A DNA stretch of 64,000 nucleotides, taken from the NCBI GenBank assembly GCA_002104945.1, contig MCFH01000045.1, forward strand, positions 124,001-188,000. Reading direction: 5' to 3'. The notes below the pieces were generated by a model. The model searched no databases. It worked only from the letters and a program-made list of their open reading frames with translations, and was not told the DNA's origin. A program made the position numbers and the translations under genes. Numbering within the stretch: position 1 is the stretch's first letter; each line of letters begins with the position of its first letter. Of this stretch, positions 1 to 20,043 are shown one piece after another. Source of the stretch: Piromyces finnis finn. Its lineage: Eukaryota; Fungi; Neocallimastigomycota.

Positions 1-1986
1 TCCATATTCGTTACATAACTCCTTGAAGTTATTAGAAGTGAATTCAGTTCCATTATCGCTTCTAAGATATTTTACTTTGGATGATAATTCATTAGTAGTT
101 TTATTCAGCCAATTTCCAAATTCTTTGAAAACATCACTTTTATTCTTGACAAATATTACCCATCCATATCGACTGTAATCATCTAAGATACTTAAAAAGT
201 ATACGTTGTCATGAATTGATGGTGTGATTGGACCTACCAAATCGATGTGTACTAGTTCCAAAACACTTGATGCTCTACTATCTGACCTTTTATGAGGGAT
301 TTCTTTCATTTTGCTTCTCATGCATATTGTACAATTGTGAATATTGTTCTTTTCATCATTATTGTTGAAATTCAGATGCCCTATTCTTCTATGCCAGTAT
401 TCACCATTGTTTCGTACATTATCGCACATTGAGTAATTATTAACTACATTACCTTCTTTGATGTACAAATTGAATACATCATATTCATTTGCTTTAACTT
501 CGTATACATTATCTGTTTTCTTATCTTTTATATATGCAAATACATTATTGTTCTTCTCATCAAAGATTATTTGGTAGCCACTTTTAACTAACTTGGCAAC
601 AGAAATTAAATTTCGTTTTACATCTGGGATGTACATTACATCTTCTAATTTTATTGGTTCTTCATTAATAGATCCATTTACTTCACCCATATGTGTTGAC
701 TTTGTAGTCGCTCCATTTGCATAATTGATTGGTTCTACATGTTCAAAAACATTTTTGAGAATTCCTATATCTTTGGTAATATGATTAGAAGCACCAGAAT
801 CTAAAGTCCATGTAGTAAAACTTGTAGGTACATTTTCACAAGATACGTAATTGCATGATTTATTATTACATTCATCATTGTTATTGTCAAATAATGTATT
901 GTAATCAACTGTAAACAAATCTTGATATCCAACTTCTGGTTCAAAGTCTTCAGTGGTTTGTTTATTTACTATTTCACCTGTTGCTAAAAATGCTTCCTTG
1001 CCTTTATTTTTCTCTTTTCTTAGCCTTCTTGTAACTTCTTCTGAAAGTTCTTTTTGAATACGACATTGTTTTACAGTATGTCCTTTTTGATGACAAAAAT
1101 AACATGTAATGTTTTGTTTATTTTTGTTATTCCAATTTCTTTCTTCATTGGACTTTTCTTTTCCTTTATTTGTATTTTTATTATGATTATTACTTTGTTT
1201 GTTGCGGTAGTATTTAGTACTTTCCTTTCTTTTATCACCTTTGTAACTACCTTCAACACTAAAGATATGTCTAATTCCGAAGGTTTCAGATTTCTCTTTC
1301 GGATCAAATTTGTTCATCTTATCTATCATTCTTGCTGTGTCCTTTTTGCATTCTTCCCAGTCTTCATGCTTAAGGACTGTGACTTTCCTATATTTTTCTG
1401 GTAAGGCTTGATACAGTAAACCAATTTTTTCTTCATCATCTATTTTCACATTTAGTTGTTCTAACTTATTAAAGTTGGAATTTAACTTATTTACAAATCT
1501 TGAGAAACTTTCTTTCGGGTCGTATTTTAAGGAGTTTGTTTCCTTAATAAGCCTATTCTTTCTTTCTATTTTATCCCCTAAATAAATGTCTTCTAATAGT
1601 TTCCACATTTCGTAGCTTGTTAAAGACCTATCTTGGATATCTTGTTGGCAGTTTGGGCCTAAAGTATACCTAATTAAAAATTGGATATTCCTATCTGTTT
1701 TTAAGTCATCTTCGGTTACGTTCTTATCATAGTAGGTATTGATTTCAAAAGGTGCCTTTAGATATTCTTCTCCGTCGATATCCATTCCTTCGTCACTTTT
1801 GATCTTTGGGGTTTTGTTTTCATCAACCCAATCTTCAAGACCATAATAATTTAAAATATTCCTCATAAACATTTGCCACGTTATGAAATTTTTATTGTTC
1901 AATTCATAAGTGACCTTTCCTAGCATAACGGTAGGATCGAATATAGGAATTGATCCAGTATCTCCGTTAGATTTTCTTTTTGACAT
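1..1986 (-). mobile_element. Ty1/copia LTR retrotransposon gag-pol ORF (gag, protease, N-terminal part of integrase), truncated by the window edge
   Basis: Manual minus-strand translation from ATG at 1986 (MSKRKSNGDTGSIPIFD...) gives 662 codons with no stop down to base 1. It is missing from the ORF track because it runs off the edge. Motifs in copia order: gag-like LNNKNFITWQMFM; CCHC knuckle CYFCHQKGHTVKQC (1063-1104); protease WTLDSGASNH (DSGA at 790-801); NVMYIP-type DVMYIPDVKRNLISV; WHRRIGHLN...CTIC zinc site (322-393); integrase ELVHIDLVGP and LRSDNGTEF. Integrase directly follows protease, which is the copia arrangement. Confidence 0.96.
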
Positions 1987-3396
1987 ATTAAAAAAAAAAC
2001 TTACTTAAATATAAGAGCAATTGAGACTCTTAATCTGTCAGATAAATTTAGTTTACACTTAAATTTATTTATAAAACTATTTGGGTTTTTATAATCTTTT
2101 ATTTATTTATATTTATTTTATAATATAAATATTGTAACTTTCTTAAAATCTTTTTATTAAAAAATAACCAAAGAATAAAAATGTAGTACAATATTAATTT
2201 ATAATTTTATAAAATACAAATACATAAAAAATACATAAAATATTATTTTGGAATGTATTTTATTTTCACATATAATAATTAATTTTGTTAACTATTTTTT
2301 TAAAAAAAAAAAAAATTTACTCTAAAGAAAAATAAATATAAAAATATCACAAAAAATACATAATATTATTATTAAAAAATAAGATAATGAAATCAAGTAT
2401 TTTATTGATATTTATAATGGAATAATAATTATTTTACATATATAAGAGAAACAATCTTATTATTTTATTAATATTTAAATAAATAATTATATAACTAAAT
2501 ATTTTTATTTTTAATTAGAGTTAACAATATAAAATAAATAAAATTCTTTATATATATATATATTTTTTTCTCATTATTACCAAGTGTAATTATAATAAAA
2601 GGATTAATAATGTTAACTTTTCCACTTCATTTCATAGCTTATTTTAAATTAATAAAAGTATCTACTTAATAATAATTAATATTATATTCAAAAGAATATT
2701 AAAATTTATAAAGTGATATATAATATATTATAATATTTTTTTGTATTATAAAAATATAATTACTTTCAATTTATATATAAAGTTTTTTATAACATACTCT
2801 TTTTTTTAATCGAGACTTTACAAACTTTTCAACGATCAGAAAAAAAATTATTATTTTTTCTTTTTCTTCTTTTTTATTATTTAGTAAAAATAAAAGAAAT
2901 TTAAAATTTATAACTTAAATATTTTAACCCTTCAGATTTTCTAAAATTTTAATGATGATTTAATCTATTTCATGATAAATTTTATTTTATATAAAAAAGC
3001 ATAAAATTTATTTTATATTATTAATTTAATTTATTTTATTGGTAAATATATATATATAAAAAAAAATAAAGAGAAAAAAAAAAAAACATTTCAAATTAAT
3101 TTTAAAATTGATTTCAATTGAATTTTTAAGAATAATAGAAATTGAATGTGAATTATTATATTAATTTATTTAAATACTATCATTTATTTTCACTTTTTAT
3201 ATTATATTAAAGATATTAATGAAATATTGTTAATAATAACTGTTTAATATTTTAATATCTTTTATTTTTTTTTTAATTAATATTAAAAATCATTTTTCAA
3301 TTTACACTCTTTAATTTCATTTGGTTTAATTTATAACTTATAATTAGCAATTTATATTTTTCATTTTATTAAACTTTGTTTTATGTTATATTAATA

Positions 3397-9467
<6,071 letters not shown>

Positions 9468-10324
9468 TAACTAATTACAATTTTTTTCCTTTTAAATTAA
9501 TATAATTCAGATTATATTAACTATACCAACAATATTTCTTTTTCTTTTATAATTAATAAAAAATACTTTTAATCAGTAAAATTAATATTTTTTAATTTAT
9601 TAATGAAAATATTATTATAAAGTAGTTAAAAAAAAGAGGAAAAGGAAAAATAAGTATTTATTGAAAGTGTTGTATATTTCGATACCATTGGATAATTAAA
9701 TATTTAATAAAATAAACAACATTTATAACAAAAAAAAATAATATATATATAATATTATATATATGCTTTTTCATAGTGAACTGTAGAATGAAATTTTGTA
9801 CTTGAAAATTAATTTTGCTTAATGAACTTTTTTATTTTTTATTTATATAATGTTAAAATTTTATAATATATATATAAAAATTATTTATAATATTTCATAT
9901 ACATTTTTTTTTCTGATTTATAAAATCATTTTGTTAACCAATAAAAATGATTTATATTTTGAAATTATCAGTATTAGTAAAGTTGAAAATTTTTTTTTAT
10001 AAAATACTTTTAAGGATATTATACAAGATTTTAATATACATAAAGAACTAATTCTTTTCTCTCAATAAACATTATATATTTTTTATTATTATTTTTTTTA
10101 TTATTTTAAAATCTCATACTTTTTATATTTAATATTTAAATTATATTATATTTTTTATTATATCTTTATTTTTGGTTTATCATTCTATATTATATAAAAA
10201 TTTACAACAAATTTCTTTTCCATCAATAGAAATTTTAAAATTATTAGAAATCCCATTTTAATATCAACAATAAATTGACTAAATAGATAAAAAAGAATAA
10301 TATTATTAAAAATATAAGAGCAGA

Positions 10325-10420
10325 ATGTCAGAAGAAATTGAACCTTTGGATGCTGATGTAATTAATTATTAATGCATAATTTTATTTTTTTCAATTATCA
10401 ATAAAATCATAAATTTAACC

Positions 10421-10467
<47 letters not shown>

Positions 10468-13400
10468 CTTTTTTCCATATCATCTTTTGTTTTATATATT
10501 AATTTCAATTAAAAAATGATTCAATAATTATTTAAATTTACAATTAATTACAAAAGTTTCTTCAACTTACACAAATTACTTCAAATACAACTCTTAAAGT
10601 TACAGAACCATTTGCTGATGAATTAAATCCTTACATTTCTTTGTTAGCAATTTCAAATAAATATGGATTTTTCCTTTTAGGTAGTCAGGAAGGTTTCATT
10701 TATTCAACAATTAAAGATTGTGTTCAAAAATTAACTTCAGATGAAGCTAAACAATCTAGCGTTAAATCCGTACAACTTGAAAATAAAATTAATATTAATG
10801 TTGATGGAACTGTTCAACAAATTGCTTTATCAGAGGATCAACTTACTGCTTTTATTGTTTTAAGTAACAATAAAGTTTTATTATATAACATTAGCCAACT
10901 TTCTAAGGAGGTATGATTTTATATAAAATCATATATATATTTTTTAAAAATTTTTGAATAAGTATAAATTAAGATAGTTTTTTTTTAAAAAAATTAATTC
11001 ATTTAATTTATATTGAAAAATATAAAATATATATATTTTATTGAAATTTATAATAATATAGAAGGAAAATACAAAATCATTTAAAGAATATAGTTATGAC
11101 CATATTGTAAAATCACTTTTACCGAATCCAAAAGATAATAATTCTTTTGCTGTTTTATTGGATAATGACGAATTAAAGGTAGAAAATTTCAAAGATAATT
11201 CCACAAATGTTTTATCTACTGATTCCACAGCAAGTAAATATATTTATATATTGATTTAATGTAATAAATTTTTATAATATTTGATGATATGTATATATTA
11301 ATATAAATGATATTTAATTCGTTTTAGTGACTTGGAGTCTCGATGGTAAATACATATTTACCGGAAATAATGAAGGTAGTATTACAAAATTATCAATGAA
11401 TAAAGAAAAATCTGAAGTGTTAGAATTACAAGAACCTTCAAATAGTAAAGGTAAAAAAAATAATAACAAACAAAAAACATGATATTATTTTATAATAATA
11501 TACAGTAATATTTAATAAAAATAAATAAATTAAGTAAACTTTTAAATTTGCTACAATAATATTAATAAAATCAAATATTATCATAGTTGTATCTATTTAT
11601 TGTCAATCCGATAATGTTACTGCAGCTTTATATTACAATGCTGATGAAGACATGATAAATACATGCATATTTTCTGGAGCTAAGGTAATTATATTTATGA
11701 TAATATTATTTAATTTTATTTTATATTATATTAAAGGTTGATATATGCATATTTATTTTAGGGTATTAAACAAGAAATGTGTGAAGATCCATGCTATGGG
11801 ATTTATGATGAGAGTCAATACTTTAATGTCAATACTCTTTCTCAAATGTAAAATTTTTATAGTATTCATATTTATTAAATTTAATTTCATATTAATATAT
11901 ATATATATTTAGATCTAAAACATATCCAAATATTATTTGCTTTGGATGTACTACTACACCAGATATTGGTGTTATTGGTCAAGCCAATGGTAAATGGCAA
12001 AATTGGACATTACCTGATAGTAATCAAGTTAGTGTTCCATTAAGCGATGATGATGAAGATTGTTACCCATATGGTATGGCTATTGATTATACTTCTGATA
12101 TTAAATTACCTGGTTCAACTCCAGATGAACCAGCTAAAGAACCAGTTCCAATTTTATGGATTTTTGATAGTAATGGTAGATTAAATGGTTTTCATTGTGT
12201 AATTGCTGGTGAAACTGAAAAGTCATCCTTAATGAGTACTCCAATTGCTATTCCACCATACTCCGGAAGTAATATCATTAGATAATTATTTATTATAATG
12301 TTAGTTTAATTATATTGAATTATATATATATTGAATTCAATTAATTTAGATTCTTCTATTCCTGCACCAACAACGGCTTCATTTGGATCTGCTCTTGTAA
12401 GTGTTTTTAATTTATACCGAATTGTTATTATTAATATCTAAAGTTATTACTATGTATTTTGAAATGAAATCATATTATTTTAACGACAAATAATAATTTT
12501 AAATAGGCATCTGGAAAATCACCATTTGGTAGTTCTTCAGGATTCAGTTTCGGAGCTTCAAATATAGATAGTAAACCAAAAACAACTAGTTTTAGTTTTG
12601 CCTCTGCAAAGGAAGAAGGAAAACCCAAAAATACAGGTTTTAGTTTATTAAATAGTCAAGCAACGACTAAAACCGAAGATAAACCAGTTACTTCAGGATT
12701 TAGTTTTGGTGAAAAAAAAACAGAAGAAAAGCCAGTTGCTTCAGGATTTAGTTTTGGTGCTAAAAAAACAGAAGAAAAGCCAGCTACTTCAGGATTTAGT
12801 TTTGGTGCTAAAAAAACAGAAGAAAAGCCAGTTGCTTCAGGATTTAGTTTTGGTGCTAAAAAAACAGAAGAAAAGCCAGCTACTTCAGGATTTAGTTTTG
12901 GTGAAAAAAAAACAGAAGAAAAGCCAGCTACTTCAGGATTTAGTTTTGGTGCTAAAAAAACAGAAGAAAAGCCAGCTACTTCAGGATTTGGTTTTGGTGT
13001 TAAAAAAGCAGAAGAAAAACCAGCTGCTTCAGGATTTGGTTTTACCAATGCTCAAACATCCTCAAATAAGGATGATAAGAATGGTAATAGTGTGTTTGGT
13101 AATGTTAAGCCTTCAATTATATCATCCCAATCAATTCCATTCTCATTTACTAAGTCAAATGTTAAAGCTAAAGTTGAAGTTAAATTTACAAATTGTTTAG
13201 ATAAGAGTAATCAAAATACTTCAACTACTCAAGCTTCAAAATCAGATGAGTTTTCACTTGATAAAAGCATACAAGGTAAGAAATCTGAAGCTCCAAAAAC
13301 TACAAAACTTGATGTAAAGAAGACTCCTATATCAAAACCAATATTTACTAAAGGTAAATTATTCTATTATATTTTTAATTTATAAATTATCAACATATAT

Positions 13401-16400
13401 ATATTAATATTTAAAAATCAATATAAATATCTTTTAGAAAAAAAAATTGAAGATAAAGTCAAACCTCCATCATCAAATAATTTCAATCATAGATTTGTTG
13501 AATCCTTTAATAATAATTACATAGTATTCAGCAATGAAATTGAAGATTTTAAAGAAAAAATCAGCTCCACTATTGAAAATATTAAAGAGATTGAAGAAAA
13601 AACATGTTTAGAATTAAATGAAACTGAATTGGCTGACTGTAGTTTGAATAATAGTGATATTATAAATAGTGAAATCAAAAAGCTTCAAGAAAAGGTTGAC
13701 AATATTAATAAACAAACAGTTGATGTTAATGAACGTAGATTAAATATTCTAACTGAATTAGTTAAAGTTGAAGCTAAAAAAACGGAAATTTTTAAGTTAT
13801 TAAATTCAATTAAAAATAATACTTATCAAAAAGTAAATATGAAATTAGGTCTTGGTCCAGAAATCGAAGAAGCTCAAAATAATATAAGATCAAAGGTATT
13901 TAAAATCGAAAATGATATTAAGGATATCTCAGAAATTATTATTAATATTAGAAAGAAGATGAATAAGAAAGCCGATTTAATTATGAAAGTTCCAGATTTA
14001 GATAGAATTTATAGAAGTATATTATATATTACTCAACACACTATAAAAATTTCTAATAGTTTAAGAAATTATGAATTAGAAATTAGAAAGTATCAAAATG
14101 AATCTCTTCTTAGAGAAAAACCATTACTTTTCAATATTCCAAAGCAAGATACAAAGGAAGATTCCTCTAAACCATTAATTTATGATAATTTATTAAAGAA
14201 TATTGAGAAAGACAAAGAAGATGATACAGAAAGAAAACAAAAGACTTCTCAAAAGATTCAATTTAAAAAATTACTCAAATTAGCTTTAACCTCTGGTAGA
14301 TCTACTTTACTTAATGATAATGTAAAAAAGATTGATAGTATTCCAATTGATAGTGTACAGTATAGTAAAGAAGAAGAAGAAGAAGAAGAAAATTCTGAAA
14401 TTGAAACTGGTGATGATAATGAGGTAACACAAGAAGAATATTATGATGAAAGTGAATATGACAGTAATGAAGACGAATACGATCAATATCTTAAGGAAGA
14501 TGGCCAAAATGATGATGAAGAAGATGAAGATATTATTGATGATGAAAATAGTGATGAAGAAGATGATGAAGATGTACCACCACTATTCAATAAAAATATT
14601 CCAGCAAAACCAAACTTTGCTTTAAGTGTTGAAAATAAGAAATTTAATATTAAACCATTTGGTACTTCAACTACCTCAATATTAAGTTCATCTACTAAAG
14701 CACCTTCTAGTGGCTTTAATTATGCAGCTGCTGGTATGAAGGTTGAAACAGATCCAGAAGGTACATGGACTTGTGAAGTATGTATGGTAAAGAATAAGCC
14801 AGGTGCAACTCAATGTATTGCATGTGAAACTGATAAACCAGGTACTGAAAAGAAAGATAATACTAAACCAACATTTGGTAGTAATAAATTAGGTGTTTCA
14901 TTTGGTGGTTTATCTTCCAATTCATCAAATAAAAAGACAGATGATACATCTTCATCTTCTAAAGTTACTCCAATTTCCGGTTTCTCATTTGGTTCTTCTT
15001 CTACAACAACTACACCATCAACTAAAGCACCTTCTAGTGGTTTTAATTATGCAGCTGCTGGTATGAAGGTTGAAACAGATCCAGAAGGTACATGGACTTG
15101 TGAAGCATGCATGGTAAAGAATAAGCCAGGTGCAACTCAATGTATTGCATGTGAAACTGATAAACCAGGTACTGAAAAGAAAGATAATACTAAACCAACA
15201 TTTGGTAGTAATAAATTAGGTGTTTCATTTGGTGGTTTATCTTCCAATTCATCAAATAAAAAGACAGATGATACATCTTCATCTTCTAAAGTTACTCCAA
15301 TTTCCGGTTTCTCATTTGGTGGTTTATCTGCCAATTCATCAAATAAAAAGACAGATGATACATCTTCATCTTCTAAAGTTACTCCAATATCCGGTTTTTC
15401 ATTTGGTTCTTCTTCTACAACAACTACACCATCAACTAAAGCACCTTCTAGTGGTTTTAATTATGCAGCTGCTGGTATGAAGGTTGAAACAGATCCAGAA
15501 GGTACATGGACTTGTGAAGCATGCATGGTAAAGAATAAGCCAGGTGCAACTCAATGTATTGCATGTGAAACTGATAAACCAGGTACTGAAAAGAAAGATG
15601 ATGCTAAACCAACATTTGGTAGTAATAAATTAGGTGTTTCATTTGGTGGTTTATCTTCCAGTTCATCAAATAAAAAGACAGATGATACATCTTCATCTTC
15701 TAAAGTTACTCCAATTTCCGGTTTCTCATTTGGTGGTTTATCTGCCAATTCATCAAATAAAAAGACAGATGATACATCTTCATCTTCTAAAGTTACTTCA
15801 ATTTCCGGTTTTTCATTTGGTTCTTCTTCTACAACAGCTACACCATCAACTAAAGCACCTTCTAGTGGTTTTAATTATGCAGCTGCTGGTATGAAGGTTG
15901 AAACAGATCCAGAAGGTACATGGACTTGTGAAGCATGCATGGTAAAGAATAAGCCAGGTGCAACTCAATGTATTGCATGTGAAACTGATAAACCAGGTAC
16001 TGAAAAGAAAGATGATGCTAAACCAACATTTGGTAGTAATAAATTAGGTGTTTCATTTGGTGGTTTATCTTCCAGTTCATCAAATAAAAAGACAGATGAT
16101 ACATCTTCATCTTCTAAAGTTACTCCAATTTCCGGTTTCTCATTTGGTGGTTTATCTGCCAATTCATCAAATAAAAAGACAGATGATACATCTTCATCTT
16201 CTAAAGTTACTCCAATATCCGGTTTCTCATTTGGTTCTTCTTCTACAACAGCTACACCATCAACTAAAGCACCTTCTAGTGGTTTTAATTATGCAGCTGC
16301 TGGTATGAAGGTTGAAACAGATCCAGAAGGTACATGGACTTGTGAAGCATGCATGGTAAAGAATAAGCCAGGTGCAACTCAATGTATTGCATGTGAAACT

Positions 16401-17970
16401 GATAAACCAGGTACTGAAAAGAAAGATGATGCTAAATCAACATTTGGTAGTAATAAGTTAGGTATTTCATTTGGAAAAGCAATAGGTGAAGAATCTAAAG
16501 AAAAAGATGTCTCAACAACATCATCAATAAAACCAGTTGTTGGTTTTTCATTTGGTTCTGCTTTAGCCTCATCAAATAATGAGAAGAAAGATAAGGATGA
16601 TAATAAATCAGAAAGTGTTAAAAAAGAAGAAGATAAAAAAGAAACCTCAACAACATCATCAATAAAACCAGTTGTTGGTTTTTCATTTGGTTCTGCTCTA
16701 GCTTCATTAAATGATGAAAAGAAAAATGATACTGATGATAAATCAGAAATTATTGAAGAAGATAAAGAAAAAGATAAAGATGATGATATAGATACTACTA
16801 CAGAAAAAATTGGATCTTTAGGAGGCAATATGTTTGGTAATAATTCACAAAGTAAAACTGAAACACACAATGTATTTGGTGTTTCTCAAGTTAAACCAAC
16901 TGAAACAACTTCAACGATGTCTACTGCATTTGGTACTACATCTTCATCTTCTTCAACAACAACAACAACATCAGCATTTGGTGCATCAACAACTACAAGT
17001 GCTTTTGGTCAATCAACATCATCCAACTCATTCGGTGGATTTAATGCTTCTGCTTCATCTAACACAACAACATCAGCATTTGGATCTTCAACAACACCAG
17101 CATTTGGTCAATCATCATTTGGATCTTCATCAACACCAGCATTTGGTCAATCATCATTTGGTCAAACATCTGCTTTCGGTAAACCTTCTGCTTTTGGAAG
17201 TCAATCCTCATCAAATAATTCATTTGGTCAAACTTCATTAATGAGTAGTTCAGTAATGAGTTCAGGATTTGGAGCATATGCTAATCAAAATAATACAGCT
17301 TCAAATAAACCAGTATTTGGTTCATCAACACAAATTGGTTTTGGTGCTACTTCTGCTCCAGGTATGAATACAGCCTTTGGATCAACATTCCCATTAGGAA
17401 ATAACATATCAGCATTCGGAAATATAAATACATCTTCATCTGGCTTTGGTGCATTTTCAAAGTAAGTCATTTAAATATTTAAATTTTTTTTTTTATATAT
17501 TATAACAAATTAACAAATTTATATATATCTTAAATTAACTAATTTGTTTCTTACCATTTATTTTATTCAAATAAATAATAAATTAGCAATAATAATAATA
17601 ATAATACATCATTTTCATCATTTGCATCAACTGCTGCTAATAATAACAATAATGGTGAAAGTATTTTCGGTAATGGAGGTTCATTTGATTCAAGTAAAAG
17701 GTAAAGAACTAATAAAAAGTATTTTTATATCTTAAAATAATACATTAATTTTATTAACTTAATTTATTCTTATATATATGTCTTTTTAAATTTACATTAT
17801 AAGTCAATTTGGATTTGGCAATTCAGGATCAAAGTAAGTATTATATAAAATTATGTAATATTATATATTAATTAATTATTATAAATTTTTAATTTTATTA
17901 ATTTTAATGCCTTTTTTTTTTTAATAACAAAATTAATAGCAAATCAAGTGCATTTACTCAATATCGTTAA
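10325..17970 (+). CDS. NUP214: Nucleoporin Nup214/Nup159-like: beta-propeller, FSFG repeats, coiled coil, acidic tract, 5x RanBP2-type zinc fingers, C-terminal FG region
   Basis: The propeller contains SLLAISNKYG and WTLPDSNQVSVPLSDDDEDCYPYGMAIDYTS...PVPILWIFDSNGRLNGF, which match Nup214 N-domain motifs as I recall them (SLLAVSNKYG; LPMGVVVDYT...PVLMLLSTDGVL). It has abundant FSFG/FG repeats and a helical coiled-coil at about 13440-14100. Manual splicing of the last three exons ends ...NKSSAFTQYR* at 17968-17970. Confidence 0.88.
12673..13046 (+). repeat. Coding tandem repeat: 8 x 48 bp encoding TEEKPATSGFSFGAKK (FxFG repeats with charged spacers)
   Basis: Unit starts fall every 48 nt (12721, 12769 ... 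12961, 13009). Eight near-identical units. Confidence 0.95.
14694..16470 (+). repeat. Coding tandem repeat with five RanBP2-type zinc fingers (WTCExCMVKNKPGATQCIACETDKP); unit 414 bp, first unit 327 bp
   Basis: The Trp codons of the fingers lie at 14766, 15093, 15507, 15921 and 16335 (spacings 327, 414, 414, 414). The 87-bp difference equals a duplicated 29-aa FG sub-unit. The pattern W-x-C-x2-C-x3-N-x6-C-x2-C is the zf-RanBP signature. Confidence 0.95.
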
Positions 17971-17998
17971 TAATAAACAATATTAAATTAATAATAAC

Positions 17999-18036
<38 letters not shown>

Positions 18037-18555
18037 AAAAATTAAAGAAAGAAAAAAGGAGAAAAAAAGAAATATAAAAATGAGAGAAAAGAAAATTTAT
18101 AATGAAAAAAGTTAACAAGTTATTCAAAAAAAAAAAAAAATTTTTTTTTCCTTTTCATTATTTTAATTTTTAATTTTTAATTTTTTTTTTTTTTTATTTT
18201 ATTGTTATTTTTTATTTTCAGTATTTTTATAATGACCATAATAATTTATCATAAAATCATGTATAATATAAAAGATATTTCAATAAAATAAAAATTTATA
18301 TTATAATTATTATTATTATTATTTTAGTATTTTTTATTGTTTTTGATTTTTATATAAATGAATTATTGAAATATAAATGAATTAATTTTTATTATTCTTA
18401 TATTTAATAAATTTAATAAAAGTTTATTTATACTTTGAGTAATTTTTCTTTCTTTTTAAATGTAAATATTTGCAATACTAATTTTTATCTAACTATTTAT
18501 TTTTTAAAGATTAATCTTCATTAATCTTTCTGTTTGGATAAATTAATGATTAAAA

Positions 18556-18598
<43 letters not shown>

Positions 18599-18672
18599 TA
18601 GTAATAAAAATAAAAAAAAATTAAAGATATATGATGGTTAATTTTATATACTATATAATTATTATAATTAAA

Positions 18673-20043
18673 TTATGATTTATTTTCCTTTTCAACAATC
18701 ATGGGAATAAGTTCATTTGATAAATTAACTTCTGTAATCGTCCATGATTTTTCGAAATATTTTACAAATGCATCTTGAGAAAGCATAGCTATATTAAAGT
18801 TATTTAATGATAATTTGGTATTGGAAGATGATTGAAAATCATTTAATGTAGATTCTGTTGTTTCTTCTTTAGGATTACCATTACCAAGTTTAATGGCAAG
18901 ATTATAAAAGGAACTAATAGCCTTCATAAAGGATTCCTCTTGAATAAATTCATCTTCTGTGTCCAAAGTATTTTCATTTATGCTTGTATTTTCGATTTGC
19001 GTATCAGAATTTTCAAATGATTGTGATTTATTGTCGATAGAGAAAATGTGGAATAAAGTGTCCATTAAATCATTAATTTCATACTCATTTAAAAATCCGT
19101 CACCATCGGTATCATGGAGATCAAATAAAAATTCTAATTTAGTATTTATTGATTTCAACATAATGATTTCAAAAATACGAATCATACCAGCTAAATCAAT
19201 AGAACATGGTAAGTATCTATATTTATTTCCATCTTTAATTGTGAAACCTTTTTTATTATTTTTAAAGGCTTCATTATTTGTTATAGTATTTTTGTATGAT
19301 TGGTAGAAATAAATTCTATCAGATAAAGGTGAACTGTAATCATTATGTAAACTTTTAATTGATAAATTATTAAAATCTTTAATAATATTGTTTTTATCTT
19401 CTAATAAATTTATATTATGCTTGTCATATTCTTCCAATGAACTATAATTTTTTGGAATATATTCTTTTGATTTCCATGGTGATATCATGTTATAAATTGC
19501 TCTGAAATGCTTTAAATCAATAGATGTTGTTAATACTAAATCATCCAAATTATTATATTGATTGTTAGAGATTTTGTTGGTTTCGCTAATATTATCATTC
19601 ATTCCCCATCCTCCTAATTTAAAGAAGTAATTACATTGATCATCATCATTACTAAACCATCCTTTAATATAATTTTCGTAAATTATCTTTTTGACTTCAC
19701 TATTATTATTATTACTATTGTTATTATCATTATTTATATCAAAATATTCTAAATCTTGAAGTTTATCATAAATAATAGAAATCACATTTTCAGAAATGCT
19801 AACAGTTTCACTAATATTTCTAACTTGTGATTTTTTATTTGAATTTTCCATACCATGAACAACTTTTAATCTAAATTTTGATCTTAATCTCTCAATCAAT
19901 TCAGTGCTTACTGTGTTTGAATAAGAATAAGCAACTTCTAATAAATGATTATATAATTCATTACCGATAAGTGCTATATATATTAATTAATATAATTTTA
20001 TATATAATAAAAATTAGTATATAAAATATTAAGTTTTTTTTTT

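What the first reader, a model, noticed from the sequence alone, without database searches (positions are those of the whole stretch)
10325..17970. Nup214/Nup159 orthologue with a five-copy RanBP2 zinc-finger array: a possible fungal stand-in for Nup358
Seen in sequence: one gene joins a Nup214-type beta-propeller, FSFG repeats and a coiled coil to an acidic tract, five zf-RanBP fingers and a C-terminal FG tail. The coiled coil, fingers and tail are in one uninterrupted 3.8-kb ORF (13629-17465), so this is not a gene-model fusion artefact. Established: RanBP2-type zinc-finger arrays in nuclear pores are characteristic of metazoan Nup358/RanBP2 (cytoplasmic filaments) and Nup153 (basket) and bind Ran. 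Yeast Nup159 and human Nup214 have none, and yeasts lack Nup358. Inference: this early-diverging fungus may have placed a Ran-binding platform on the cytoplasmic mRNA-export hub (Nup214-Dbp5-Gle1). That would be a pore architecture I do not recognise as described.
Basis: partly seen in the sequence, partly recalled or inferred. Interest (0 to 1): 0.78.

Follow-up and report, generated by a model that had tools for sequence, protein, structure and literature searches.

The report
Nup214-like pore protein with Ran-type zinc fingers
This gut fungus (Piromyces finnis) has a real gene for the nuclear-pore protein Nup214/Nup159 that also carries five zinc fingers of the Ran-binding kind so far described only in animal pore proteins, and the same design turns up in many other early-diverging fungi.

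Summary
Window 10325-17970 (+) holds a 13-exon gene. All introns are GT-AG, and the translation equals GenBank protein BCR36DRAFT_126265 of Piromyces finnis (2104 aa).

Domain order:
- NUP159/214 beta-propeller (Pfam E 6.7e-32; best fold matches are Nup214 and Nup159 N-terminal domains)
- FSFG repeats
- about 210 helical residues
- an acidic tract
- five nearly identical RanBP2-type fingers set among FG linkers
- an FG tail

It is not a gene-model fusion. An intron-less 6.5-kb contig from a 71%-identical relative encodes the whole architecture in one ORF. In Coemansia umbellata most of the propeller and the fingers share one 2264-codon ORF.

Each finger is closest to the Ran-GDP-binding fingers of Nup153 and Nup358 (E 6e-17). 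Ubiquitin-binding NZF fingers score far lower (E about 4e-3).

The design is not unique. All 16 finger-bearing proteins among the best 150 propeller relatives are fungal: many chytrid orders, plus Coemansia and Smittium. Mortierellomycotina, Dimargaritales, Synchytrium, Fimicolochytrium and vertebrates lack the fingers. Databases hold these proteins under automatic names such as "Nup153" or "RanBP2". I found no paper describing the design.

Ran binding and a Nup358-like role are inferred, not shown. This scan had not reported the gene before. Earlier unchecked notes describe two other pore-related genes elsewhere in this genome.

The parts
10325..17970 (+). Whole coding region of the Nup214/Nup159 orthologue. 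13 exons: 10325-10357, 10557-10910, 11062-11233, 11328-11450, 11587-11684, 11762-11847, 11913-12268, 12350-12396, 12507-13353, 13438-17461, 17587-17700, 17804-17833, 17940-17970.
   Evidence: All introns are GT-AG. The translation equals P0001, 2104 aa. Exon joins are gap-free against the intron-less orthologue P0002.
10560..12204 (+). N-terminal seven-bladed beta-propeller of the NUP159/214 type (aa 13-386, spliced from exons 2-7).
   Evidence: Pfam PF16755 E 6.7e-32. PDB sequence hits to the Nup214 NTD at E 1e-18 to 1e-19. AlphaFold model pTM 0.77, with top Foldseek hits 3fmp, 3fmo, 2oit, 3fhc, 1xip and 3rrm.
12376..13112 (+). First FG region, mainly FSFG (aa 417-625). It includes a 48-bp tandem unit, 7.8 copies, at 12669-13043.
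   Evidence: Translation, TRF and FG census.
13482..14111 (+). Helical, presumed coiled-coil region (aa 721-930).
   Evidence: AlphaFold secondary structure gives four long helices, but at low confidence, pLDDT 44. The region is 72-75% identical between genera. No sequence match to solved Nup214/159 coiled coils.
14367..14576 (+). Acidic D/E-rich tract (aa 1016-1085).
   Evidence: Translation. The same position is acidic in several relatives.
14754..14843 (+). RanBP2-type zinc finger 1 (aa 1145-1174).
   Evidence: Pfam PF00641; coordinates.
15081..15170 (+). RanBP2-type zinc finger 2 (aa 1254-1283).
   Evidence: Pfam PF00641. Best PDB match is the Nup153 finger-RanGDP entry 3gj8, E 5.8e-17.
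15495..15584 (+). RanBP2-type zinc finger 3 (aa 1392-1421).
   Evidence: Pfam PF00641.
15909..15998 (+). RanBP2-type zinc finger 4 (aa 1530-1559).
   Evidence: Pfam PF00641.
16323..16412 (+). RanBP2-type zinc finger 5 (aa 1668-1697).
   Evidence: Pfam PF00641.
14689..16474 (+). Tandem array of the finger-plus-FG-linker module. The first unit is 327 bp; the following units are 414 bp, 3.8 copies.
   Evidence: TRF reports 98% matches and no indels.
16419..17970 (+). C-terminal FG tail (aa 1700-2104), crossing three short introns.
   Evidence: 27 FG motifs. The C-terminus matches that of the intron-less orthologue L001/P0002.

Best explanation
This is the Piromyces finnis orthologue of the cytoplasmic-filament nucleoporin Nup214 (yeast Nup159).

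Shown here:
- It is one gene and one protein.
- It has a Nup214/159-type propeller, FSFG repeats, a conserved helical segment, an acidic linker, five homogenised zinc fingers of the Nup153/Nup358 subclass set among FG linkers, and an FG tail.
- The same order of parts recurs in Nup214/159 orthologues of many chytrids, other Neocallimastigomycota and Kickxellomycotina.

Inferred from what is established for Nup214/Nup159:
- The helical segment joins the Nup82/88-Nsp1/62 coiled-coil hub on the cytoplasmic ring.
- The FG regions bind transport receptors.

Inferred from finger similarity:
- Each finger binds Ran, preferentially Ran-GDP. The mRNA-export hub would then also tether several Ran molecules per protein at the cytoplasmic mouth of the pore. 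In animals that job is done by the finger array of Nup358.

The most economical history is one old insertion of a finger module at the boundary between coiled coil and FG domain in an early fungus. Unit amplification and homogenisation within lineages followed, with loss in Mortierellomycotina, Dimargaritales, some chytrids and, by established knowledge, the well-studied yeasts.
For: - Gene model equals P0001.
- Propeller: Pfam E 6.7e-32; phmmer to the Nup214 NTD at E 1e-18 to 1e-19; Foldseek top six hits are Nup214 and Nup159 NTDs at E 1e-25 to 1e-17, against 1e-12 for generic WD40 propellers; the Atlas nearest cluster is Nup214-like, score 0.96.
- Fingers: Pfam E 5.5e-41, five stretches. A single finger scores E 5.8e-17 against the Nup153 ZnF-RanGDP entry 3gj8. 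It matches all Nup358 fingers. TRABID and HOIP NZF fingers reach only about 4e-3 to 8e-3.
- Bley et al. (bioRxiv 10.1101/2021.10.26.465790) report that all NUP358 and NUP153 fingers except NUP358 ZnF1 bind Ran, with a preference for Ran-GDP.
- Single transcript: L001, a 6484-nt contig, has one ORF (275-6454) encoding propeller plus four fingers at 71% identity. In Coemansia umbellata one 2264-codon ORF holds PF16755 and PF00641.
- Spread: 16 of the best 150 propeller relatives carry fingers, and all 16 are fungal. The fingers sit in the same place in all of them.
Against: - No experiment shows Ran binding, pore localisation or sidedness in any of these fungi.
- The helical region has no detectable sequence match to solved Nup214/159 coiled coils, and its model is of low confidence.
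- Coemansia fingers replace the [LM]-V-x-N core with E-L-K-S/N, so they may bind something else.
- The deep branches of the propeller tree are unresolved. One gain with losses cannot therefore be told apart from several gains.
- Unchecked notes of this scan say the same genome has another finger/FxFG nucleoporin, so Ran-binding fingers may not be specific to this protein.
Confidence: 0.65

Rival explanations
1. Gene-model artefact: a Nup214/159 gene (propeller, FG) and a separate Nup153-like gene (coiled coil, fingers, FG) lie head to tail and were wrongly joined.
For: The link between the FSFG exon and exon 10 rests on one 84-nt intron (13354-13437). The Anaeromyces robustus database model P0006 lacks the propeller.
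Against: - The intron-less contig L001 of a 71%-identical relative carries everything in one ORF.
- Coemansia umbellata has most of the propeller and the fingers in one 2264-codon ORF.
- All nine joins up to exon 10 are in frame and align without gaps to P0002 and P0003.
- P0006 starts inside the conserved helical region, so it is a truncated model.
- Three runs (from two studies) hold 0.66-0.67 of the sampled words. Fully spliced RNA would be expected to hold 0.71. This is only a hint.
Confidence: 0.03
2. The gene is real, but the fingers do not bind Ran. They would act as ubiquitin-binding NZF fingers, as RNA-binding fingers, or as docking sites for COPI or other factors used in nuclear-envelope remodelling.
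For: The PF00641 fold serves several ligands. Weak matches to TRABID and HOIP NZF fingers exist. Coemansia fingers lack the [LM]-V-x-N core. From my own knowledge, Nup153/Nup358 fingers are also reported to bind COPI.
Against: The P. finnis finger matches the fingers of the Nup153 ZnF-RanGDP entry 3gj8 over about 37 residues (E 5.8e-17 for the chain). That is about 13 orders of magnitude better than its match to NZF ubiquitin binders. It keeps M-V-K-N and C-I-A-C where the aligned Nup153/Nup358 fingers have L-V-x-N and C-[IV]-[AS]-C. NUP358 ZnF1 has S-L-K-N at that place, and Bley et al. report that this finger harbours sequence variations at important sites and binds Ran-GDP weakly. Such conservation over a very long divergence fits a very conserved ligand such as Ran.
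Confidence: 0.2
3. The fingers are a recent, functionally neutral repeat expansion inside a disordered FG domain. They would have been acquired independently in several fungal lines by domain shuffling among FG nucleoporins.
For: - Units are 98% identical within P. finnis, and copy number varies from 1 to 6 between species.
- Fingers also occur on other fungal nucleoporins, for example a NUP50 + 5 fingers + RanBD protein in Chytriomyces.
- Distribution is patchy, and the deep tree nodes are unresolved.
Against: - The fingers lie at the same place in every lineage: after the helical segment and at the start of the C-terminal FG domain.
- All four cysteines and the Trp are kept in the fingers listed. 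The core Asn is kept in most, though several Coemansia fingers lack it.
- Each species keeps its own homogenised variant. That means the array is maintained rather than decaying.
Confidence: 0.1

Closest known systems
Human Nup214/CAN and yeast Nup159 (cytoplasmic filament nucleoporin complex)
   Same: The N-terminal propeller belongs to the same Pfam family and has the same fold. FG repeats and a helical segment come in the canonical order. The C-terminal FG domain follows the helical segment, as in the vertebrate Nup214 row of the rough domain map.
   Different: Five Ran-type zinc fingers and an acidic tract are inserted between the helical segment and the FG tail. The vertebrate Nup214 proteins examined have none. 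Yeast Nup159 has none by established knowledge.
Zinc-finger domains of metazoan Nup153 and Nup358/RanBP2
   Same: Same finger subclass. The best solved match is a Nup153 finger bound to Ran-GDP (3gj8), and all Nup358 fingers match. The fingers form a tandem array set in FG-rich disordered sequence.
   Different: No Nup153 N-terminal domain (PF08604), no RanBD (PF00638), no cyclophilin and no Nup358 solenoid is found in P0001. The array is carried by the Nup214 orthologue instead.
Trypanosome NUP149 of the cytoplasmic NUP76 (Nup82/88-like) complex
   Same: It is a nucleoporin of the cytoplasmic Nup82/88-type complex with four zinc fingers, and Ran-TurboID biotinylates it heavily (PMC11825100). 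The idea is the same: fingers on the cytoplasmic export hub.
   Different: [quoted passage not shown] NUP149 also has no Nup214-type propeller.
Chytrid Nup50/Nup2-like protein with fingers (Chytriomyces hyalinus, P0281)
   Same: A fungal nucleoporin with five PF00641 fingers. It shows that these fingers are a mobile module among peripheral nucleoporins of early-diverging fungi.
   Different: It has a NUP50 N-terminal motif and a RanBD. It is therefore probably a basket protein, not the Nup214 hub.

Membership tests
Nup214/Nup159 nucleoporin | N-terminal seven-bladed beta-propeller of the NUP159/214 type | tested here: met
   PF16755 E 6.7e-32. Nup214 NTD chains at E 1e-18 to 1e-19. Foldseek top six hits are Nup214/Nup159 NTDs, TM 0.63-0.80.
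Nup214/Nup159 nucleoporin | FG-repeat regions | tested here: met
   57 FG motifs, of which 16 FSFG. Weak PF13634 match.
Nup214/Nup159 nucleoporin | Coiled-coil segments that join Nup82/88 and Nsp1/Nup62 | tested here: inconclusive
   Long helices are predicted at aa 721-930, but pLDDT is 44. The region is 72-75% conserved between genera. No sequence match to solved Nup214/159 coiled coils.
Nup214/Nup159 nucleoporin | Binds Dbp5/DDX19 and sits on the cytoplasmic face | not testable with these tools
   Indirect only. The best fold matches are Nup214-Ddx19 and Nup159-Dbp5 complexes. A D-Y-T motif (aa 347-349) is invariant in eight fungal propellers and is aligned to D-Y-T in Xenopus Nup214.
Nup153/Nup358-type Ran-binding zinc finger (PF00641 subclass) | W-x-C-x2-C-x3-N-x6-C-x2-C module with four zinc-binding cysteines | tested here: met
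   Five exact matches. PF00641 with five stretches.
Nup153/Nup358-type Ran-binding zinc finger (PF00641 subclass) | Closer to Ran-binding fingers than to NZF ubiquitin binders or other subclasses | tested here: met
   E 5.8e-17 against Nup153 (3gj8) and matches to Nup358. TRABID and HOIP score 4e-3 to 8e-3.
Nup153/Nup358-type Ran-binding zinc finger (PF00641 subclass) | Binds Ran, preferring Ran-GDP | not testable with these tools
   No complex prediction or assay is available here.
Nup358/RanBP2 | N-terminal alpha-solenoid, four RanBP1-type domains, SUMO E3 region, cyclophilin domain | tested here: not met
   The Pfam scan of P0001 at E 0.01 lists only PF00641, PF16755, PF13634 and a weak NZF overlap. 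The protein is not a Nup358 orthologue.
Nup153 | Nup153 N-terminal pore-targeting domain (PF08604) | tested here: not met
   Absent from P0001. Present in the animal Nup153 hits.

The most novel reading that the evidence does not exclude
Ran-binding zinc-finger arrays were an ancestral feature of the fungal, perhaps opisthokont, cytoplasmic Nup214 hub. They would do the Ran-capture job that animals assign to Nup358, and were later lost in Mucoromycota and Dikarya, the only fungi whose pores have been studied.

An unchecked note of this scan reports a separate Nup358-N-terminal-like protein in this genome. Taken with that, Nup358 would be a later assembly of modules that once sat on several pore proteins.
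Probability: 0.3. Interest if true: 0.75.

Novelty: new variant of a known kind. Interest (0 to 1): 0.55.

Why it matters
Textbook and recent review accounts treat Ran-binding zinc fingers at the pore as a property of animal Nup358 and Nup153. Fungal pores are known only from yeasts and Chaetomium, which lack such fingers.

A finger array on the Nup214/159 orthologue, found across chytrids, anaerobic gut fungi and Kickxellomycotina, would change that picture in three ways:
- The cytoplasmic face of many fungal pores may recruit Ran directly.
- Finger modules have moved among peripheral nucleoporins.
- The yeast pore is a reduced state rather than the fungal norm.

It also offers a compact, naturally occurring system for testing what a Ran-finger array does at the mRNA-export hub.

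Tried and rejected
   - Afterwards I sent no DNA of 10909-10950 to any search tool. The Rfam scan started at 10951.
   - Only a local translation script read the last two bases of exon 2, and database protein ids were used for the protein searches.
   - There is therefore no read-level evidence for P. finnis itself. The only hint is that three runs hold 0.66-0.67 of the sampled words, against 0.71 expected for spliced RNA.
2. A search for sequence homology of the helical region to solved coiled coils found nothing meaningful.
3. The AlphaFold model of the helical region has too low confidence (pLDDT 44) for a fold search.
4. The propeller tree resolves only shallow clades, so it cannot settle one gain against several.
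5. Nine literature searches found no description of a Nup214/159 with RanBP2 fingers. The library lacks many subscription papers, so this is not proof of absence.
6. The Rfam scan of 10951-18600 found nothing.
7. No TQT-type dynein-light-chain motifs are present.
8. The antisense ORFs in the repeats (for example 12656-13048 and 16379-16870, minus strand) were judged mirror ORFs of low-complexity repeats, not genes.
Full report
**1. What is there**

The region is very AT-rich. GC is 10-15% in spacers and introns and 20-37% in exons.

A hand-built model joins exons with canonical GT-AG introns. Ten exons reach the stop at 17465. The database protein P0001 (GenBank BCR36DRAFT_126265, Piromyces finnis, 2104 aa) is identical over 2046 residues. 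It continues through three more short exons.

With exon 10 ending at 17461 and exons 17587-17700, 17804-17833 and 17940-17970 added, the translation equals P0001 exactly. The 3.8-kb ORF 13629-17465 is the body of exon 10.

The flanking genes are independent:
- Upstream there is an RQC-domain (RecQ-type) exon at 8766-9029.
- Downstream there is a minus-strand gene with a weak EF-hand at 18673-19899.

**2. Domains**

Pfam gives PF16755 (NUP159/214 propeller, aa 37-379, E 6.7e-32) and PF00641 (five fingers, E 5.5e-41).

The propeller:
- It matches solved Nup214 N-terminal domains by sequence at E 1e-18 to 1e-19.
- An AlphaFold model (pTM 0.77) has as its six best Foldseek hits the Nup214 NTD, alone or with Ddx19, and the yeast Nup159 NTD, alone or with Dbp5. 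These score E 1e-25 to 1e-17.
- Generic WD40 propellers start at 1e-12.

After the propeller come, in order:
- FSFG repeats (48-bp unit, 7.8 copies);
- a region predicted as four long helices, aa 721-930 (low confidence), which is 72-75% identical between genera;
- an acidic tract, aa 1016-1085;
- the finger/FG array;
- an FG tail.

**3. Is it one protein?**

I could not lay reads. Other evidence settles the point.
- P0002, a 71%-identical orthologue, is encoded by a 6484-nt JGI contig with one uninterrupted ORF (275-6454). That ORF holds the propeller and four fingers. The P. finnis gene has twelve introns, so this intron-less contig looks like assembled mRNA. Its protein aligns across all nine joins up to exon 10 and shares the C-terminus.
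- In Coemansia umbellata one 2264-codon genomic ORF contains both PF16755 and PF00641.
- Neocallimastix lanati has the same architecture with five fingers.
- Three public runs, from two studies, hold 0.66-0.67 of the sampled words of 10300-14700. Fully spliced RNA would give 0.71 and genomic DNA about 1. This is only a hint.

**4. What kind of finger?**

One finger with its flanks was searched against all solved chains.
- Best matches are human Nup358 (all eight fingers, 7r5j), Xenopus Nup358, and the Nup153 finger pair bound to Ran-GDP (3gj8, E 5.8e-17; second finger 42.9 bits).
- Many single Nup153 and Nup358 finger-Ran entries follow.
- Ubiquitin-binding NZF fingers (TRABID, HOIP) reach only 4e-3 to 8e-3.

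The fungal finger keeps M-V-K-N and C-I-A-C where the aligned Nup153/Nup358 fingers have L-V-x-N and C-[IV]-[AS]-C. NUP358 ZnF1 has S-L-K-N at that place. Bley et al. report that all NUP358 and NUP153 fingers except NUP358 ZnF1 bind Ran, with a preference for Ran-GDP, and that ZnF1 harbours sequence variations at important sites. They also report that a Phe or Leu in a roughly 10-residue N-terminal extension adds a second contact.

The fungal modules have a conserved G-[MFL] about 7-10 residues before the Trp. It is present in Neocallimastigomycota, Globomyces and Polychytrium. Ran binding is thus a well-founded inference, but it is not shown.

**5. How widespread?**

A profile of eight fungal propellers found 1706 relatives among 1.84 billion representatives. 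Of the best 150, sixteen carry RanBP2-type fingers, and all sixteen are fungal.

With fingers:
- Chytridiomycota: Podochytrium, Physocladia, Chytriomyces, Siphonaria, Entophlyctis, Blyttiomyces, Clydaea/Lobulomyces, Nowakowskiella, Polychytrium, Globomyces.
- Kickxellomycotina: several Coemansia species and Smittium.
- Neocallimastigomycota.

Full-length relatives without fingers:
- Mortierellomycotina, Dimargaritales and Mycoemilia;
- Synchytrium, Fimicolochytrium and a partial Quaeritorhiza model;
- all vertebrate Nup214 examined.

A rough domain map shows the fingers always in the same place, just after the helical segment and any acidic tract, at the start of the C-terminal FG domain. That favours one old insertion followed by losses. 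The propeller tree resolves only shallow clades, so several gains cannot be excluded.

Within each species the finger units are nearly identical but species-specific. The arrays therefore evolve by amplification or homogenisation.

**6. Known or new?**

These proteins are in GenBank and UniProt with automatic names such as "Nuclear pore complex protein Nup153", "E3 SUMO-protein ligase RanBP2" or "RanBP2-type domain-containing protein". The architecture is thus catalogued implicitly.

Nine full-text searches found no paper that describes it. Reviews present Nup358 as animal-specific, and the finger arrays as features of NUP358 and NUP153.

The nearest published parallel is trypanosome NUP149. 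It is a four-finger protein of the cytoplasmic Nup82/88-like complex and is strongly labelled by Ran-TurboID, but its fingers are reported as not homologous.

Fingers also occur on other fungal nucleoporins, for example a Chytriomyces NUP50 + five fingers + RanBD protein. Unchecked notes of this scan mention a second finger/FxFG nucleoporin and a Nup358-NTD-like protein elsewhere in this genome. I did not test those.

**7. Verdict**

It is a member of the Nup214/159 family with an added Nup153/358-type finger array. It is not a Nup358 or Nup153 orthologue, because their defining domains are absent.

The functional reading, a Ran-GDP platform on the cytoplasmic mRNA-export hub, is plausible and testable but unproven.

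The feature is lineage-wide in early-diverging fungi rather than a curiosity of this species. That lowers its oddity but raises its evolutionary interest.

Noticed in passing
window 14689-16474: The five finger modules are 98% identical at the DNA level (414-bp unit). Each related species has its own homogenised variant: five identical fingers in Neocallimastix lanati, four in Polychytrium, six nearly identical in Podochytrium. This is a clear case of concerted evolution or repeated unit amplification inside a nucleoporin.
   Followed up: partly
P0281 (Chytriomyces hyalinus, 890 aa); also P0240 and P0295: These chytrid Nup50/Nup2-like proteins combine RanBP2-type fingers with a NUP50 N-terminal motif and/or a RanBP1-type domain. 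P0281 has all three (five fingers). By precomputed Pfam, P0240 has fingers + NUP50 motif and P0295 has fingers + RanBD. Yeast Nup2 and human Nup50 are not known to have this combination.
   Followed up: partly
P0040, P0043, P0044, P0045, P0073 (chytrid models); P0037 (Coemansia): Several database models carry long N-terminal extensions before the propeller, some with extra fingers or a second propeller-like match. The Coemansia models are fused to Elongator protein 1, whereas C. mojavensis has two separate proteins. These are probably merged neighbouring genes.
   Followed up: no
window 10421-10468: Intron 1 contains an uninterrupted run of about 48 T. A run of about 34 A lies just after the stop codon, at about 18003-18036.
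   Followed up: no
No DNA of it was sent to any search tool afterwards.
   Followed up: no
window 8766-9029 (+) and 18673-19899 (-): Neighbouring genes. Upstream is an exon with an RQC (RecQ C-terminal) domain, E 9e-8. Downstream, on the minus strand, is a 408-aa ORF with one weak EF-hand match.
   Followed up: partly
L002 (Logan SRR33769957 contig, 6737 nt): An unnamed 2008-aa protein with a propeller and one finger groups inside the Coemansia clade in the propeller tree. The run probably contains a member of the Kickxellales.
   Followed up: partly
P0006 (Anaeromyces robustus, 1032 aa): The database model of the orthologue starts inside the conserved helical region and lacks the propeller. 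It is probably a truncated gene model.
   Followed up: partly
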